DNA of 64,000 bases, taken from assembly GCA_964106915.2 (NCBI GenBank), contig OZ066916.1; one strand, 5' to 3'. The DNA comes from Podarcis gaigeae (lineage: Eukaryota). Made by a program: the position numbers and the translations under genes. The notes below the pieces were generated by a model that searched no databases, was not told where the DNA came from, and was given only the letters and a program-made list of their open reading frames with translations. Below, in pieces: positions 30,319 to 50,170 of the stretch; within the stretch, counting starts at the first letter, position 1; each line of letters starts with the position of its first letter.

Positions 30319-33886
<3,568 letters not shown>

Positions 33887-34154: not shown

Positions 34155-34160
34155 ATTAAA
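34155..34160 (+). terminator. ACTA1 polyadenylation signal (ATTAAA variant)
   Basis: GAAGCATTAAA ends a 3'UTR block that resembles the mammalian ACTA1 3' end as I recall it. GT-rich sequence follows downstream. Confidence 0.75.
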
Positions 34161-34950: not shown

Positions 34951-37900
34951 TCAATTACTGGGTGTCAAACCTAACTGAGCCAAGGACCTAAAATACCCCA
35001 GAGGGCAGGACAGATTAGCACAGCACACTTGGTGTGCAAAGGGACTTGCAGCTCCCAGCTGTTCTTTTCTTTACCATACCCTCTAAAGGAATTGCATTAG
35101 ATTCTCGCTAATGTTTTCTGGGCTACCACTCAGTTGGAAAGAGTCTGAAGGTCATCTGGTCCATTTTACTTCAGCCAAACGCCTGCCACATCCCAAGGGC
35201 TCAGAGCAGGTTACAGTGTGGTATCATAAAACCATTTCCTGTTTGGAAGACCTGCAGTCTAAAGGAGTTTAAAACGGAAATCACTTGCACTTTTGGCTTT
35301 ACTAAAGGGAAACTACTTCCTGACCTGACAGCCCAGGCCTCCATTTCCATCATTCCCATTCTCTGGATTCTTAGAAGCATTTCCATCCTCCCCGAGGCAG
35401 CGCAAACTTGCCTGTCCTTTGTACCTTTTCATCTCACCCATCTACCTACCTCGCTCTTGCACACACACCCCTCTTGGCAAAGCCTGGTATAATCTAAACC
35501 TGTCTTGGCTTCCCAAATCACATCCCACACATGGATCTGTGACTGACCATCCATAGATGGCTGGGGCCCACCACTACCTTCAGCATCTTCCAAGCAGGTG
35601 AAACAGGCTTTGAAGTATCCACAAGGAAGCACAAAGATGGACTGAGCCCAGGTGGGAGCAAGCAGACTTGCGGAGCCTTCGCAGAAATCCTGCTCCCATC
35701 TTCCTTCCAGGGCAAGTGGGCAGTCCTTGCATGGTGATGGGATCCCTGGCAGCTTAGCCCCACTGTATGTCAAAAGCAGAGAGCAGGTGCAGACCAGAGG
35801 CCCCTTGCCAGAGGAGACTAACACAAGGACACATTCAGTAAAACAAGCTCAGATCATCAGGCTTGGTAATGAATCAAGCCAGCTTTCTCAGATGCCTTGC
35901 TGGAAATGCTGCAAACGACAGATGTCTCGATGACACAGGGTGGGAAAGGTGATACTTTCGTAAGGCTGTGCGCCTTTTGCTCTCTTTTCAGCAACAGTGG
36001 GAGCAGTTGCAGAAGCTGGACGGGATTCCTCCCATACAAGCCCCACACAGAACTTCGGGAGCAAGAAACAAGAACAAAATCCGACCTCTTCTGCAGTTCA
36101 TAGAATTGTAGAGAGTTGGAAGGGACCCAAAGTGTCATCTGTTCCAAACCCCTGCAAAGCCCCTCCATTGAAACCCATGCAGGAGATGTTCCCAGTGACT
36201 TTATTCTTGGGGTGGGTGTGAAATAAGTAGATCTAGCCCATGGGTCCTCCTCATCTGACCTACTTTCCCCAACCCGTGGCAATTTAGCTTAAACAACAGC
36301 TTCCCATTGGAGCCAGCAGGAATTTTAATGGGGGAGTGGAGCTCAAGAGGAACCCTCCAGTGCTGAAAATAGAATGAAAAAAGAAAAACTCCTGGTGGCT
36401 TCAACGGGAGGCTGTTTTCAAGCCCAGTTGCGTCAGAGGGGAACATTTGGGAGGGTCACAGCTGGGGAAAAAGTTTGTGCATTCTTGGGAAGCAACATAC
36501 AGTGTAAACCGATGCCGGTGACAGATAATGGAATGTGATTCTATTAACCGGGCAACACGTACGTCAGACAAGCTGACCTTGGCAAACTGGAAGGGAGCAG
36601 AACTGAGGAATTTGGTGCTTCACAGGGCAATTGTAAGGATTGCAAGAAGAAAATGCATGGGAAGTGCTTTGAACACTTGAAAGCTCTATACAAATATAAC
36701 AATAATGACTGCTGTTACTATTCCTACTATTCCTGAGTTTTACTAGGGTGTCCCATTCTCCTATATCACAGGGCTGATATGAGCGCCAAATGTCTCTTCC
36801 TGGGCTTCAGAGAATTTACAGGCTGAACTTGGTGAAGACCTATTTATCCAGCTTGGAACAAAAAACAGAAATGTTTTCAATTGTTTCTGGGGATGTGCAG
36901 AGAGTGGGCACCTGTTGTATGTTGACAGGCCTGCTATTCCACAGAACAGGGGCAGCCCTGCTTCTGGGATCTTTGGAACATGCAGGAGAAACCCTCCTGC
37001 AGACCGCAGGGCTCTTCTCTAAAGTATTCCAAGAGTGCTTTGCAAATATATGTCACCGGCTTCCTGTCAACATGCGGAATGCTTATTTCACAAGTCAGAT
37101 ATAGCAAGGCGGCAGGGCTTTTAAAAATAGAGAGGCCTGGCTTGCAGACCATAAAATGCAGCTCCCAAGGAAAGCTGCCTGCCGCCTGCTTTCAAAATTT
37201 CATTGTGCAAATCTTCACATTATCCGGATAGTTGCCGTACATCCAGCGCACGTGTAAATCCATCCTATTTCAGGGAGCAATGTCTTCAGAATCAGACCCT
37301 GCTTGCCCCTCTCGGTTTGGCTTGCCCCCTTCTTGTGGCCCCAGACTTCCTTGAAGTCAACCTGTGCTTATTGGTGGACCATAGAACTGCATAATCTTCC
37401 TGCTATTCCTATCACCCTTCCTGAGTCTGGAGGGCATTGCTGGTTGAAGGGATATATATGGAAAGGAAGGAAGGTGCCTTCAGCCCAGTGCCTTTCTTCT
37501 TGAAAAAAAAACCCCATGAAGTTGTTACAGTGAGTGCCAGACTTTTAACCAGTGCTTTGCTTCGGGGGGGGGGGGGGAGGTGCCAGTACTGCATCCCTCA
37601 GAAAAAAGCACTGGTGGTGGTTATTGGTATGGTAGCATGGAAGGCTAACAGTGGCTGGAGCCAGAGCCAAGGACAGGCAAGCAAAGTAGTTCTTGGTGGG
37701 GGTTTTTTGTCCCCATGCTCCTCCCTGCTGTGTTCTGCAAGGAAAATCTGGAGACTAAGAAGGAGCCACCCCTTGGACCGGTTGTGTGTAAGAAGGCAGG
37801 CAGGTTGGGGGGTGCTTGTGGTTGAATGGATCAGCTTCCACTGTGTGCAACATCTATGGAAGGTCCACAGGTCAGTGGCAGAATGGCCTACTTGCATTCA

Positions 37901-38361
37901 GAAGGCCTTGAGTTCAGATTCTGACTCCTCCAATTGAAATGATCAGAGTTGGCTTCATCAGGACCAGGAGGAGCAAATCACATCGCCTGTCGCAAGATCC
38001 ATTTAGAAACAAACCAGAGCCCACGCTGAGCCAGTGCACACACTACGGATGAATTCAGCGTAGCACTAAGGAAAACGTTCTGTCAACATAAGAATTCCGC
38101 TTGACTGGCAAAACGATCTCCCCTTTCCTCTCTCTTGCACGCTGTTCTGGGGGTTCCCACAACCTTCCAGAGCAGATCGGGGGGCGTGCGTGCGGCTGCA
38201 CTGGGAGAGGAGAGTGAGGGGAAGCTCCGTTGTGCTAGGAACAGTCCTTGGGCTAACATTCACTAACGGTTACAGATAGGTAGCCGTGTTGGTCTGCCAT
38301 AGTCAAAACAAAAAAAAATTCCTTCCAGTAGCACCTTAAAGACCAACTAAGTTAGTTCTTG

Positions 38362-38399
38362 GTATGAGCTTTCGTGTGCATGCACACTTCTTCAGATAC
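38362..38399 (-). ncRNA. Minimal type I hammerhead ribozyme motif, - strand copy
   Basis: Reverse complement GTAT-CTGAAGA-A-GTGTGCATGCACAC-GAAA-GC-TC/ATAC, with an intact G-C pair at the base of helix II. Confidence 0.78.
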
Positions 38400-38437
38400 G
38401 TATCTGAAGAAGTGTGCATGCACATGAAAGCTCATAC
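38400..38437 (+). ncRNA. Minimal type I hammerhead ribozyme motif, + strand copy
   Basis: GTAT-CTGAAGA-A-GTGTGCATGCACAT-GAAA-GC-TC/ATAC. Helix I is GTAT:ATAC; helix II closes with a G.U pair; predicted cut after 38433. Confidence 0.72.
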
Positions 38438-38520
38438 CAAGAACTAACTTAGTTGGTCTTTAAGGTGCTACTGGAAGGAATTTTTTTTGTATTCACTAAC
38501 AGAACTGAGTAGCCGAATCT

Positions 38521-38732
38521 GGCCCTATACCTTTAAAGTCTAGTCGAAACACACTGCCCACCTCAGAGAATTCTGGGCACTGGGCACACTCCTCTCTTGT
38601 TTGCCAAAGCAGTTTGTTAAGGGTTGCTGGGAATTGTAGCTCTATGGGGAATAAGCTACAGTGCCCAGAATTCTTTGCAGGGGAGGAATGTTTCTTGAAT
38701 GTGCTTTCAAGTTATAGTGCGTATATGCAGCC
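38521..38732. mobile_element. Degenerate palindromic non-autonomous DNA element
   Basis: Internal inverted repeat agaattctgggcactg / cagtgcccagaattct, plus a tgtagct...agctaca hairpin. Boundaries approximate. Confidence 0.5.
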
Positions 38733-39236
38733 TGAGTCTCCAGGATAGGGAAACAGCCTCTATGGAAACCAATAGGTCGTAAGTTGAAATCTAAGGCTCT
38801 TCTGGGATATTAGCTTGAATAAAAAGGAATTTACCACATACAAAGGCTCTAAGCTCCTGAACTTTCTGCTGGGCCACTGTTTAGCTGGAGGTCTCAAGTC
38901 TTCTTTGCACAAGGGAATTCTATATGAAAATCACTTCCCCCTCCTGGGGCAACCACCAAGCTGTTACTGTGTTGATGAGAATCTGAGTGTTGAGAACCTT
39001 TCTGTGGATTGAAACCTTTCAACAACAAAAAAAGATACCTGAGGATTACCAGAAGTTCTCTGTTACATGAAGACCTTTGGCAACATTGCAGTTCATACTG
39101 GATTACCATAAGGCTCTGTAGGTTATAGAGGCAGCCTCAAAACTTTTATTTCAGAGTAGTTTAAATATAGTAGCCAATACAGTATATTTGCCTTCATAGT
39201 AGATTGCTCTTTCAGAGCCAAACTAGATGATAATTT

Positions 39237-39744
39237 TGTACACCACCCCCGTTTCCAACTGGGGCACTGTTTCAAGGGTTCCAGGCGCTTACCAAGAATT
39301 TGTGTTTCTTTTGGAATGAGGGGCAGCGGAGACTGTGGTGTCTTTATGATATATGGTTTATTTACACATAATACAACTTGAGCCTACAATGGAGGGGCTC
39401 ACGGCATCAACACCCCAAGATGGCCTTGCTTCTCCCATAGCTACAACCTTGGATTCAAGCAGAAATCAGGCATGGCTCTGTCTCTCGCTCTGGCTTCCCT
39501 GCCTGCACCTTTGCTTCTAGCTTCTAGCTCACACACCTTAACTCTGCCCTTTGTCTTTCTAAGTACCAGCAAGTTTTGGGGGAGGAGGGGAGCATTTGTC
39601 TTCTGGCTACATCCTTTGTTTCTTAGGTACCTTTGTTAACCATACTAAGGCCATTAACTCATCATTCCATGAATTGAATCTGTGCTGAATCCAGGAATTT
39701 GTAGGGGGTTCAGGCATACAGCCCACCCACCCCCATTTATAACA
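39237..39744 (-). mobile_element. Possible solo LTR (~510 bp)
   Basis: TGT...ACA ends, minus-strand AATAAA near 39357-39362, imperfect 4-bp flanks attt/atat. Confidence 0.4.
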
Positions 39745-40949
39745 ATATGTTAGTTCATCTGATGCAGCTACTTGGGGCAGAAAAATGTATTGGCCGAACC
39801 AAAGAGTCTGTGTACATGTTCATGCAAGGCAAGGAAGAAAGCAGGTATGTGCCATTGCTAGTGCCTGATGATGTATACTTGTTTGATTCAGTTGCAAGTT
39901 TTAGCCCTGGCGGAGTTATATCAGAAGAGTGTACATTGCTGTTTGAGGTGCCTAACCCATGAAGCTGAAAGGTTTGCACTCTTCCCAGTAACAAAACAAC
40001 ATTTCAGCCACTCCACTTGGATTAACAACAGCAAAGGTTGTTTTTATCATCATCAAGCCCCACCTCCAAGATAAATTGGGATGGTGGCCATAGCTAGAAG
40101 GGGGCTGGACACCAGGTGAAGGAATACAATGGGAACATTTACTGGGAATCTGTCTTCACTGTGAGCTACCATTAGCACTTTTCTATTTTGGGAATACAGA
40201 GTGAGCTTCATAGGGGGGTGTCCCATACGTGACAGCTGATCAGACAGAGACGCTGAGTGGGGGATGCCATTTAGCATTACAGAGCACTGAGGCCGCAAGC
40301 CCAGAAGGGAACAGATGTGCAAGATTTGTGGTCATCACTGATGAATGGCTGGATGTTATACAGACCAAAAAGAACCAGACTGCAAGGTTGCCTGTGCTGG
40401 AAAAGGGCAGGGATGACTGAACTCTAAAGAGTGATCCATGTTCCTTTTAACTGCGGCAGCGCCTGCTTTTTCTGACTCTACACTTCTGAGGGTTTGAAGT
40501 TTTGGCTTATGGCAGAAGACCTTACAGGCCATAGTCACATTAATAAGAAGAGCTTGCTGCATCAGGCCAATGGCCCATCTGGTCCAGCCTTCTTAAATAA
40601 GAACCTCTGCTTTCAAGTTGTACCGGAATGGAGAGGAAAGCAGGTGCTGGTGGTAGGATCCTTGGGTTCAACTGACATCACGGTCAACAGAAAGGAAATG
40701 GGTATGGTGATTAGAATGTTGGAGGACAAGTGGAGTGAAGCCATGAAGCTGGGATTGGGACTGCCCATAAAGGTACCCTAAGGCAAGGCCACAACCGTGT
40801 GCTATGGAATCCCAGAATTATGCTCCAGCGTTCTTTGCGACCATTTGAGTGATCCTCAGTTGCACCTGCTGGACTGCATGCTTCTTCACTGGCACACCTA
40901 CAAACATGGCCACTTGGGGAATGCTTGTATTGTCCGGCCAGGGCTTGGA

Positions 40950-48639: not shown

Positions 48640-50170
48640 GATTTCAAAGGTCTGCGCAACGTTAACTCTGAATTTGGTTAAATTGACCGGTTCCACGACA
48701 GCTAGTCTCCAGCAAAGCGTCAGGCACAGGCGAGCAAGCCTTAGGTGGTCCGCACCGTCTGCGATCACGTGCGATGCCCATGTGGGGTACTTTATTTTAT
48801 AGCAGCAGCTGCGTTGGTGGGTGACTAAAACCTGGTGACTAACACCACTGCAGAGACGAAAACCAACAACCGGGCAGGTTCAGAGAAAATCCCGAGTCCA
48901 CTCCCGCCTCCAGGGACAAGGACAGCCGCAGCCCGAGGCTTCCTGGCGCTTCTCCCCAGCCTCCCCACCCGCTAAGCTCCAAACGTCCCCTCGGGCTCGC
49001 CGGCGAGGGACCTTCGAATGTTTCCCCGGAGCCTCGAAGGCTCTTTCGTGACGTAGCCGAAGGACGCCCTCCTCCTCGCGCGCCGATTGGCTGAAGCGCG
49101 CGGAGGCGGTTGCCGAACGTCGCTGTTTGTGTTTGAACGTTCCAGCGGGAGGGTGGGGCGAGGACGGCTCCGTCGGGCAGGCGGCCGATTCGCTGCTTGA
49201 GCAGGGCGACCCTCCCCCCCCCCCGGCTGGACGGCGCGGCGCGATGGTGCCGTCTCGGTGCGTGAAGAGCGAGTACATGAAGCGCTTCAAGGAGCCCAAG
49301 TGGGAGGCGTGCGGCCCCTGCTACCAGGAGCTGCTGCGCTACCGCCTGAGCCGGCGCCTTTTGGAGCAGGCGCACCGGCCCTGGTTTTGGGACGGCTGGG
49401 AGCAGGACAGCAGCCAGAGCGGCGGTGGCTCCCCGTCGCCCCCGGGCACGTCCAGCCCGCCGGGTGGCCAGCAAGGAGAAGAAGCAGCGGCGCCTGGCGA
49501 AGCTGGCCTGGGCGGGGCGGCGGCAGCAGCGGGGGACGCCGACAGATCCTGTCCCGAGGAGCCCTTGCACGGGCCGGGTATGTTCCTCCGCCGCCGAGGG
49601 GAGAGGAAGAGGACGGCCTGCCGGAATGACCTTGAGCCATTCTCCGGGAAGGCGGGCGGAGGGGGCGCTGGGAGCCGCGGCTGCAGAGATGAGTCGCTGG
49701 GGAAGGAGGGAGGGAGCTGCAGTGGCCGGATGTCCCTGCTCTGCAATGGAGCTGCCGCTGGATGTAAATGCGGGGCGGGGGGCGCGCGGAGGAGAAAGCG
49801 GCTTTCCTGGGTTTTAAATAAATCTTAACAGCTGGGGCTCCGCGTCCGGCTTGGCTCTTGAAGCCGCCCTCCCCTCCGCGCGCATCGGGAAATGGAGGGT
49901 GCCAGGACCGTGCAGGCGCTTCGGCCTCTTGCCGCCGAGTGGCTTCGCGGCTCCTCCTTACGCGTCTGTTGGGGAACGGGCGAAGGCGGCCATCGAGGGC
50001 CACGGACGTGGTTGCTGCCAATACTCGGCCCCTCCCTCCGGCGCCCACCCGGGTCCTTCCGGGGGCGAGAGATCTCCAGCTGGATCGTCCCCGCCGAGAA
50101 GCGCTTTCGCCCTCGGGAGGCACTTTCCTCGCTTGCGAACGAATAGATTGCTACCGCTGACGTAACAGCG
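48640..50170. promoter_or_regulatory. CpG island over the CCSAP promoter and first coding exon
   Basis: Very high GC and CpG content. TGACGT 49049-49054, inverted CCAAT 49086-49090, TTTGAA 49132-49137. Confidence 0.88.
49244..49577 (+). CDS. CCSAP: CCSAP first coding exon
   Basis: Kozak-like gcgATGg; donor CCGG|gtatgt, phase 1. Confidence 0.9.

What the first reader, a model, noticed from the sequence alone, without database searches (positions are those of the whole stretch)
38258..38500. Back-to-back hammerhead ribozymes in a young, spacer-less palindromic insertion downstream of ACTA1
Seen in sequence: a 223-bp insert flanked by a perfect 10-bp duplication (ATTCACTAAC). Positions 38311-38399 pair with 38400-38488 with no spacer and one mismatch (38374/38425). 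Each arm, on its own strand, reads GUAU-CUGAAGA-A-[GUGUGC AU GCACAY]-GAAA-GC-UC^AUAC. That is the hammerhead core CUGANGA...GAAA...UH, with helix I (GUAU:AUAC), a hairpin helix II and helix III reduced to the palindrome AGCU. Established: minimal type I hammerheads and inverted terminal repeats are hallmarks of Penelope-like retroelements, and such minimal ribozymes are thought to cleave as dimers. Inference: transcription in either direction yields one ribozyme plus its antisense copy upstream, so the ribozyme fold competes with a ~90-bp dsRNA hairpin. The single mismatch is a CpG-type C>T at the base of helix II in the + copy and may weaken it. The site is ~4.1 kb past the ACTA1 poly(A) signal, where muscle read-through is plausible, so it could act as a cleavage/termination site or a dsRNA/siRNA source.
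Basis: partly seen in the sequence, partly recalled or inferred. Interest (0 to 1): 0.85.

Follow-up and report, generated by a model that had tools for sequence, protein, structure and literature searches.

The report
Penelope retroelement stub with hammerheads
This is a real, recent 223-bp insertion of the tail end of a Penelope-like jumping gene, laid down as two back-to-back copies that each carry the family's small self-cutting RNA motif; the layout is a described signature of these elements, and nothing found here suggests it does anything for the neighbouring muscle actin gene.

Summary
A 223-bp insert (38268-38490) lies between perfect 10-bp duplications. It contains a spacer-less 89-bp inverted repeat with one CpG-type mismatch. 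Each arm carries every core position of a minimal type I hammerhead.

The motif matches the published Penelope-like-element (PLE) "min-HHR": an extra base between A9 and G10.1, a G10.1-C11.1 pair, a 4-bp helix I, and no helix III hairpin, only a palindromic AGCU. The insert layout matches the published PLE insertion signature: head-to-head 5'-truncated copies, a short duplication, and a 40-nt tail on one side only.

I read it as an ordinary, very short PLE insertion that is probably inert. Any transcript would carry one sense ribozyme directly after its antisense. It is predicted to fold into an 89-bp hairpin (-156 to -166 kcal/mol) rather than the ribozyme fold (-6 to -7). No second sense copy is present for the dimer these ribozymes need.

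Cleavage or termination of ACTA1 read-through is therefore unlikely. No other family copies could be fetched, so covariation and the link to a PLE coding sequence remain untested. The scan has already noted about 99 hammerhead/Penelope items in this genome, including similar palindromes.

The parts
38258..38267 (.). Left copy of the 10-bp target-site duplication ATTCACTAAC
   Evidence: (D3)
38268..38307 (-). One-sided 40-nt 'tail'. It is the 3'-most part of the long arm (sense strand is -) and has no partner on the right side. A+C is 58% over the tail and 67% over its last 30 nt.
   Evidence: It matches the optional 30-40-bp PLE tail described in PMC8557442, PMC3846280 and PMC11167929.
38308..38399 (-). 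Body of the long arm (92 nt): hammerhead, then a stop codon of an open frame, then untranslated sequence. Nucleotides UUGGUCU/AGACCAA form a predicted stem spanning the point where the short arm ends.
38362..38399 (-). Intact minimal type I hammerhead motif with a G10.1-C11.1 pair. Predicted cut between 38366 and 38365.
   Evidence: the MFE of the isolated 38-mer shows helix I and helix II
38400..38437 (+). Second hammerhead motif with C11.1>U (38425), giving a G.U pair at the base of helix II. Predicted cut between 38433 and 38434.
38400..38490 (+). Short arm (91 nt). It is the inverted copy of 38308-38399, ends without the tail, and has one T fewer in the homopolymer.
38491..38500 (.). Right copy of the 10-bp target-site duplication

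Best explanation
The insert is a severely 5'-truncated, non-coding insertion of the 3' end of a Penelope-like retroelement. It was laid down as two head-to-head copies.

Shown directly:
- A 10-bp target-site duplication.
- Two arms that meet without a spacer.
- A 40-nt tail on one arm only.
- A complete PLE-type minimal hammerhead motif in each arm.

Inferred from the published biochemistry of the Anolis element PAc:
- The element's endonuclease nicked both target strands 10 bp apart.
- The top strand primed reverse transcription at the distal start site, which gave the long arm with the tail.
- The bottom strand primed at the proximal start site 40 nt upstream, which gave the short arm.
- Both cDNAs ran about 90-130 nt through the hammerhead.
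- They were then joined head to head by a template switch or self-priming at a short palindrome (the axis is TAC|GTA).

The hammerhead is cargo of the element's own life cycle. At this locus it is most likely inert. A transcript in either direction has only one sense ribozyme, placed directly after its perfect antisense. It should therefore zip into an 89-bp hairpin, and it has no second sense copy with which to form the AGCU:AGCU helix III dimer.
For: Anatomy.

Motif beyond chance.

The features that Cervera & de la Pena 2014 list as emerging beyond their search descriptor are met, apart from within-genome covariation, which was untested (PMC4209133):
- a G10.1-C11.1 pair;
- palindromic positions 15.2-16.2;
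- a 4-5-bp helix I and a long helix II.
The same paper reports dual motifs on opposite strands and such motifs in reptiles.

The Anolis Poseidon_Ac hammerhead has the same order and spacing but different helix sequences (compared by eye): CUGAGGA-U-GCCUGC...GUGGGC-GAAA-CG-UC^AGG. Helix I positions 1.2/2.2 and 1.3/2.3 and helix II positions 10.2/11.2 and 10.3/11.3 differ on both sides and still pair.

Layout:
- Inverted pLTRs with 9- and 10-bp duplications, a 31-bp tail, palindromes at the inverted junction, and head-to-head as the most frequent arrangement (PMC3846280).

Mechanism: PAc cleaves and extends both target strands and starts reverse transcription at two internal sites whose spacing is the tail (PMC11167929).

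Inertness:
- Whole-insert MFE is -166.1 (+) and -155.8 (-) kcal/mol, against -5.6 and -7.1 for the hammerhead helices.
- The equilibrium probability of the helix II or helix I pairs is 1e-17 or less.
- PLE hammerheads cleave poorly and only as dimers.
- For PAc the ribozyme was not needed for insertion, and no RNA-seq reads ended at its site.
Against: - No other copy of this family could be fetched, so within-family covariation and continuity with an RT/GIY-YIG coding sequence are untested here. The window holds no PLE ORF.
- Rfam 15 gives no hammerhead hit even at E<=10 on a 50-nt stretch.
- The arms alone fold no better than shuffled sequence (z 0.26 and 1.07). The short arm's MFE is not the hammerhead fold.
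- The two-strand priming model is inferred from another PLE family. A single cDNA that folded back on itself would also give a perfect palindrome.
- Equilibrium energies ignore proteins and kinetics.
Confidence: 0.85

Rival explanations
1. The insert is the same element, but it is not inert. Read-through or intergenic transcription makes the 89-bp perfect hairpin. The hairpin is then processed into small RNAs or edited by ADAR, feeding silencing of the PLE family.
For: A perfect 89-bp hairpin is predicted on either strand. Rfam miRNA-precursor models score it at 55-66 bits, which reflects its hairpin shape. In the rotifer A. vaga, small-RNA profiles switch polarity across inverted PLE halves (PMC3846280).
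Against: No transcription is shown. The site is 4.1 kb past the ACTA1 poly(A) signal and about 10.6 kb before the CCSAP exon. All Rfam miRNA hits are below their gathering scores.
Confidence: 0.1
2. The hammerheads cleave here and act as a cleavage or termination site for ACTA1 read-through transcripts.
For: The core of the - strand copy is fully intact. The + strand copy, the one in ACTA1 sense, carries only C11.1>U.
Against: - The hairpin is about 150 kcal/mol more stable than the ribozyme fold and forms as soon as the sense copy emerges.
- There is no helix III and no second sense copy for dimerisation.
- PLE min-HHRs show no monomer activity and low dimer activity in vitro.
- The copy in ACTA1 sense is the mutated one.
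Confidence: 0.02
3. The palindrome is an assembly fold-back artefact rather than real DNA.
For: PLE inverted structures are known to trouble assemblies (PMC8557442). No reads could be checked.
Against: - The arms differ by a substitution and by one base in a homopolymer.
- The arms have unequal lengths, with a tail on one side.
- The whole insert is framed by a perfect 10-bp duplication inside unique sequence.
Confidence: 0.03
4. The insert is a non-PLE element, such as a fold-back or MITE-type DNA transposon or a SINE, that carries a hammerhead-like string by chance.
For: No PLE coding sequence is linked to it in this window, and no repeat-library match was available.
Against: - The left terminus (38268-38307) has no inverted partner at the right terminus, so there are no terminal inverted repeats.
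- There is no poly(A) or simple-repeat tail.
- The motif carries PLE-specific extras that were not required by chance.
Confidence: 0.03

Closest known systems
Metazoan PLE minimal hammerhead (min-HHR), Cervera & de la Pena 2014, PMC4209133
   Same: Type I topology and all core nucleotides. Unpaired base between A9 and G10.1. G10.1-C11.1 pair. Helix II longer than the canonical 4 bp. A 4-bp helix I. No helix III hairpin, only a palindromic 15.2-16.2 (AGCU). Occurrence as pairs on opposite strands.
   Different: This family's helix sequences are its own. Helix II (GUGUGCAUGCACAC) is a perfect 14-nt palindrome. Activity and within-family covariation were not tested here.
Poseidon_Ac (PAc) of Anolis carolinensis, Frangieh et al. 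2024, PMC11167929
   Same: A lizard PLE with the same hammerhead architecture, a tail defined by two internal reverse-transcription start sites, and both target strands cut and extended.
   Different: There is no recognisable sequence similarity outside the core. In PAc the ORF starts at stem II. Here an open frame runs through the motif and stops 9 nt after it. The PAc start sites are 111-118 nt into the ORF, whereas here the arm ends lie 57 and 98 nt past the cut site.
Inverted-pLTR Penelope insertions of Adineta vaga (Pen2a_Av type), Arkhipova et al. 2013, PMC3846280
   Same: Head-to-head inverted pLTRs, a palindrome at the inverted junction, a 9-10-bp target duplication, and a one-sided tail of about 31 bp.
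   Different: Those copies usually enclose an ORF or captured DNA. Here nothing lies between the arms, so the whole insert is the palindrome plus the tail.
Animal non-LTR retrozymes (tandem hammerhead repeats giving circular RNAs), PMC7229834 and bioRxiv 10.64898/2026.07.22.740005
   Same: Short non-coding PLE-related units that carry type I hammerheads.
   Different: Retrozymes need at least two hammerheads in the same orientation to release a unit. Here the two are on opposite strands, so no unit can be excised.

Membership tests
PLE minimal type I hammerhead (min-HHR) | Core C3 U4 G5 A6 N7 G8 A9 / G12 A13 A14 / A15.1-U16.1 / H17, in type I order | tested here: met
   Both arms meet it. There were 0 descriptor hits in 300 random 64-kb sequences.
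PLE minimal type I hammerhead (min-HHR) | [quoted passage not shown] | tested here: met
   An A follows CUGAAGA in both copies.
PLE minimal type I hammerhead (min-HHR) | G10.1-C11.1 pair closing a helix II longer than the canonical 4 bp | tested here: met
   The - copy has G-C and the + copy has G.U after the change at 38425. Helix II is 5 bp with a CAUG loop. Published PLE families show 6-8 bp.
PLE minimal type I hammerhead (min-HHR) | No helix III hairpin; palindromic 15.2-16.2 that allows a dimer | tested here: met
   The sequence is GAAA-GC-UC, so AGCU is self-complementary.
PLE minimal type I hammerhead (min-HHR) | Compensatory changes in helices I and II across copies of the family | not testable with these tools
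   There is no other copy in the window. Public collections gave none or only chance hits. A by-eye comparison with PAc shows paired changes across families only.
PLE minimal type I hammerhead (min-HHR) | Self-cleavage as a dimer | not testable with these tools
   This needs in vitro transcription.
Rfam hammerhead families (covariance models) | A score reaching the model's threshold | tested here: not met
   No hammerhead hit at E<=10 on 3 kb or on 50 nt. My reading is that these models expect a helix III hairpin and no extra core base. The published min-HHRs were found with a dedicated descriptor.
Endonuclease-bearing Penelope-like element insertion | Head-to-head inverted 5'-truncated copies with a palindromic junction | tested here: met
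   criterion.
Endonuclease-bearing Penelope-like element insertion | Optional 30-40-bp tail at one end only | tested here: met
   A 40-nt tail at 38268-38307; criterion.
Endonuclease-bearing Penelope-like element insertion | Short target-site duplication | tested here: met
   A perfect 10-bp duplication. Duplications of 8-10 bp are reported for A. vaga copies.
Endonuclease-bearing Penelope-like element insertion | Sequence continuity with a copy encoding RT and GIY-YIG endonuclease | not testable with these tools
   The window holds no such ORF, and the genome cannot be searched. Scan notes s1-656167 and s1-670767 are leads only.
Non-LTR retrozyme | Two or more hammerheads in direct orientation bounding a unit | tested here: not met
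   The two motifs lie on opposite strands.
miRNA precursor families hit in Rfam (MIR1222, mir-559, mir-3688 and others) | A score at or above the gathering threshold | tested here: not met
   Scores are 66 against 90 bits, 58 against 95, and 57 against 84. These are generic long-hairpin matches on both strands.
TIR DNA transposon / MITE | Inverted repeats that reach both termini | tested here: not met
   The left 40 nt have no partner at the right end.

The most novel reading that the evidence does not exclude
The locus may record how PLEs integrate. Each of the two nicked target strands would have primed reverse transcription at a different one of the two internal start sites, which would explain the tail on one side only. 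The two antisense cDNAs would then have been joined by annealing of their 3' ends at a short palindrome native to the element (TACGTA here; the 14-nt helix II palindrome in other copies). Under this reading, spacer-less PLE palindromes record a symmetric, dimeric integration complex rather than self-priming on an antisense template.
Probability: 0.25. Interest if true: 0.4.

Novelty: new member of a known kind. Interest (0 to 1): 0.13.

Why it matters
It matters little as a single locus. It is one more young copy of an abundant lizard Penelope-like family, and both its ribozyme motif and its inverted layout with a tail are already described.

Its value is as a clean specimen: unmutated arms, an intact duplication, and unequal 3' ends. 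Together with the other palindromic copies the scan has noted in this genome, it could be used to test how PLEs build head-to-head inserts.

For ACTA1 biology nothing is implied.

Tried and rejected
- **Rfam 15.** Searched at E<=10 on 37000-40000 and on 38396-38445. No hammerhead family was hit, only sub-threshold miRNA hairpin models.
- **Other copies in the window.** blastn of the arm and a pattern search with 3 mismatches found none. The 72% similarity at 37678-37706 does not extend when aligned and is chance.
- **Pattern scans of public collections.** Viral contigs gave 0 hits. Metagenome contigs gave 7 hits, about the number expected by chance, none with a pairing helix II. Genome contigs gave 0 hits.
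- **The look-up of sequencing runs.** No reads were laid, so neither expression nor the fold-back question could be checked. The decline named no places. afterwards still used letters or a pattern from the insert; I made no further searches with them.
- **Paper search for strings of the element.** It found only an unrelated primer.
- **The search of earlier findings.** By sequence and by place near the window it returned nothing.
- **Papers not held.** Lunse et al. 2017 and Pyatkov et al. 2004 are not held. Their content is cited only through the review PMC6765202.
- **Formal alignment with the PAc hammerhead.** The comparison was done by eye.

Full report
**1. What is in the sequence**

- The repeat finder reports a perfect 10-bp direct repeat, ATTCACTAAC, at 38258-38267 and 38491-38500.
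- It also reports an inverted repeat with arms 38311-38399 and 38400-38488, 89 nt each, 99% complementary, with no base between the arms.
- A script confirms that the insert between the duplications is 223 bp. The only mismatch is 38374 (G) against 38425 (T).
- The mismatch sits in a CpG: TTCGTG on the left against CATGAA on the right. On the ribozyme strand of the right arm it is a C>T change.

One refinement is needed. A blastn of the left arm against the window carries the right-arm alignment on to 38498. Beyond the homopolymer only the GT at 38489-38490 belongs to the arm; the remaining 8 nt are a weak match (6 of 8) inside the duplication. The two arms differ by one base in the run (nine A against eight T).

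- The arms are therefore 38308-38399 (92 nt) and 38400-38490 (91 nt).
- The left arm alone continues for a further 40 nt, 38268-38307.

**2. The hammerhead motif**

On its own strand each arm reads GUAU / CUGAAGA / A / GUGUG-CAUG-CACAC (CACAU in the + copy) / GAAA / GC / UC^ / AUAC. In standard hammerhead numbering:

- Helix I is 4 bp (GUAU:AUAC).
- C3-A9 is CUGAAGA, followed by one extra A.
- Helix II is closed by G10.1-C11.1.
- G12 A13 A14 follow.
- A15.1 and U16.1 are separated only by G15.2 and C16.2.
- C17 is the cleavage nucleotide.

I wrote a descriptor for this arrangement. It required helix I of at least 4 bp, helix II of at least 4 bp, an optional extra base, a palindromic 15.2-16.2, and U-H.

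- It finds exactly these two sites in the window.
- It finds none in 300 random 64-kb sequences generated from the window's dinucleotide frequencies.
- A much looser version finds 4 hits in all 300.
- A pattern search gives 2 observed against 0.00 expected.

The two sites are copies of one event, so this counts as one non-chance motif, not two.

Rfam 15 reports no hammerhead family, even at E<=10 on a 50-nt stretch. My reading, which I did not test, is that the Rfam models expect a helix III hairpin and no extra core base. Cervera and de la Pena found this class only with a dedicated descriptor.

**3. Comparison with what is published**

Cervera and de la Pena 2014 (PMC4209133) describe the metazoan PLE "min-HHR":

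- Helix II is larger than usual.
- Helix I is 4-5 bp.
- G10.1-C11.1 is highly conserved.
- Positions 15.2-16.2 are palindromic in place of a helix III, so the motif can act only as a dimer.

They note pairs of motifs close together on opposite strands, and motifs conserved in reptiles. They also report no detectable activity for a single motif and low activity for dimers. Each sequence feature is met here.

The Repbase consensus of Poseidon_Ac from Anolis carolinensis is given as a supplement to Frangieh et al. 2024. Across its unit boundary it carries CUGAGGA-U-GCCUGC...GUGGGC-GAAA-CG-UC^AGG.

- The order and spacing are the same as here.
- The helix sequences differ but still pair. Positions 1.2/2.2, 1.3/2.3, 10.2/11.2 and 10.3/11.3 differ on both sides.
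- This is covariation between two families only.

**4. The insert as a whole**

Three papers describe the layout seen here as typical of endonuclease-bearing PLEs.

- **Craig et al. 2021** (PMC8557442): insertions are highly 5'-truncated. [quoted passage not shown] A 30-40-bp tail is often present at only one end.
- **Arkhipova et al. 2013** (PMC3846280): inverted pLTRs flanked by 9-bp and 10-bp duplications, with a 31-bp tail on one of them and palindromes at the inverted junction. Head-to-head is the most frequent arrangement.
- **Frangieh et al. 2024** (PMC11167929): purified PAc protein cleaves and extends both target strands. Reverse transcription starts at two adjacent internal sites of the RNA, and the sequence between them is the tail.

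In the present insert the long arm ends 98 nt past its predicted cut site. The short arm ends 57 nt past its own. The difference is the 40-nt tail.

The tail is A+C-rich: 58% overall and 67% in its last 30 nt. In the fold of the long arm, a stem (UUGGUCU with AGACCAA) spans the point where the short arm ends.

An open frame runs through the hammerhead and stops at TAA 9 nt after helix I. This fits a scan lead that PLE ORFs in this genome end in their hammerhead (s1-670767). I could not check that lead further.

**5. How it most likely arose**

This section is inferred.

- The geometry requires that the top strand was nicked after 38267.
- The bottom strand was nicked at the other side of the 10-bp duplication.
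- Each 3' end carries the duplicated 10 nt.
- The top strand primed a cDNA that starts at the distal site and includes the tail.
- The bottom strand primed a cDNA that starts at the proximal site.
- Both cDNAs grow inwards, so their "heads" meet. This gives the head-to-head arrangement without the need for an antisense template.

Both arms stop at the same template nucleotide. One strand must therefore have been completed by copying the other. Possible routes are a template switch, annealing of the two cDNA 3' ends at a short palindrome (the axis is TAC|GTA), or self-priming as Arkhipova et al. proposed.

A single cDNA that folded back would also give a perfect palindrome. In that case, however, the 40-nt difference between the arms would match the tail length only by coincidence. 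I cannot decide between these routes from one copy.

**6. Age**

The duplications are identical. The arms differ by one CpG transition and one homopolymer base, and show no other change in about 175 further positions. The insertion is therefore young. With so few differences I give no date. Either difference could also have arisen during insertion.

**7. What it does**

Folding the whole insert as RNA gives an uninterrupted hairpin of the two arms.

| RNA | Whole-insert MFE (kcal/mol) | Energy with only hammerhead helices I and II (kcal/mol) |
|---|---|---|
| + strand | -166.1 | -5.6 |
| - strand | -155.8 | -7.1 |

- The equilibrium probability of the helix I and helix II pairs is 1e-17 or lower.
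- In either direction the antisense copy is transcribed first, and the sense ribozyme begins at the palindrome axis. The hairpin can therefore nucleate as soon as helix I emerges.
- The motif has no helix III, and a transcript of this locus has no second sense copy with which to form the AGCU:AGCU dimer.
- The isolated long arm and the two 38-nt cores do fold into helix I plus helix II. They are no more stable than shuffled sequence (z 0.26, -0.44 and 0.37).
- The short arm's best fold is a different structure (z 1.07).
- Two isolated cores are predicted to prefer a domain-swapped duplex through the 14-nt palindromic helix II (-30.6 kcal/mol against 2 x -6.8 kcal/mol).
- For PAc, the ribozyme needed the element's protein, was dispensable for insertion in vitro, and left no read ends in RNA-seq data.

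I therefore take the locus to be inert cargo. Cleavage or termination of ACTA1 read-through is very unlikely. A double-stranded RNA product is possible only if the site is transcribed.

**8. Context**

- The + strand upstream carries actin exons that begin [11 protein letters not shown]. From general knowledge this is the skeletal alpha-actin N-terminus.
- The actin reading frame ends at 33886.
- The nearest poly(A)-like hexamer is ATTAAA at 34155, which is 4,113 bp before the insert.
- A CCSAP exon lies at about 49.1-49.8 kb on the + strand (Pfam PF15748, E 1.6e-31).
- The insert is thus intergenic.
- No ORF of 130 aa or more in the window looks like a PLE protein.
- The N run at 31178-31323 inside an actin exon was left untouched.

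**9. What could not be done**

I have no read evidence on expression or on the assembly of the palindrome.
- No other copy of the family could be fetched from the collections on hand.
- Within-family covariation and the link to a coding PLE therefore remain open.
- I did not verify the species.

**10. Earlier scan notes**

The scan holds about 99 notes with the words "hammerhead" and "Penelope", all in this genome. They include several spacer-less palindromes with back-to-back hammerheads and a 2.3-kb head-to-head copy with GIY-YIG ORFs. Two follow-ups judged tandem copies of the family to be ordinary members of a known class. I treat these notes as leads. They agree with my reading, and they suggest that the palindrome axis differs between copies.

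**11. Verdict**

The identification as PLE hammerheads in a young inverted insertion is supported. The proposed function at the ACTA1 locus is not supported. The kind is already described, so interest is low.

Noticed in passing
window 30331-33886 (+), N run 31178-31323: Actin exons with the skeletal alpha-actin N-terminus [11 protein letters not shown]. The stop codon ends at 33886, and ATTAAA at 34155 is the only poly(A)-like hexamer nearby. A 146-N masked stretch lies inside an exon and was left alone.
   Followed up: partly
window 49127-49825 (+): An ORF with a strong match to Pfam CCSAP (PF15748, E 1.6e-31). This places the insert in the ACTA1-CCSAP intergenic region, about 10.6 kb upstream of this exon.
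   Followed up: partly
window 38564-38582 / 38659-38677: A 19-nt inverted repeat (95% complementary, 76-nt spacer) begins 64 bp to the right of the duplication. It may be another small repeat element or a hairpin.
   Followed up: no
window 38374-38387 (-) and 38412-38425 (+): Helix II of the hammerhead (GUGUGCAUGCACAC) is itself a perfect 14-nt palindrome. Two isolated cores are predicted to form a domain-swapped duplex (-30.6 kcal/mol) rather than two hairpins. It may also serve as a fold-back point in other copies of the family.
   Followed up: partly
window 38352-38399 (-): Frame 1 of the long arm is open through the hammerhead (VSEEVCMHTKAHTKN) and stops at TAA 9 nt after helix I. This is what would be expected if the family's ORF ends inside its ribozyme motif.
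   Followed up: partly
window 38491-38498 against 38300-38307: The first 8 nt of the right-hand duplication (ATTCACTA) resemble the start of the tail (TTTGACTA), matching at 6 of 8 positions. This could be junction microhomology or chance. Aligned over the full 10-nt duplication it is 6 of 10 matches, and the probability of at least 6 of 10 is about 0.02 for a single register.
   Followed up: partly
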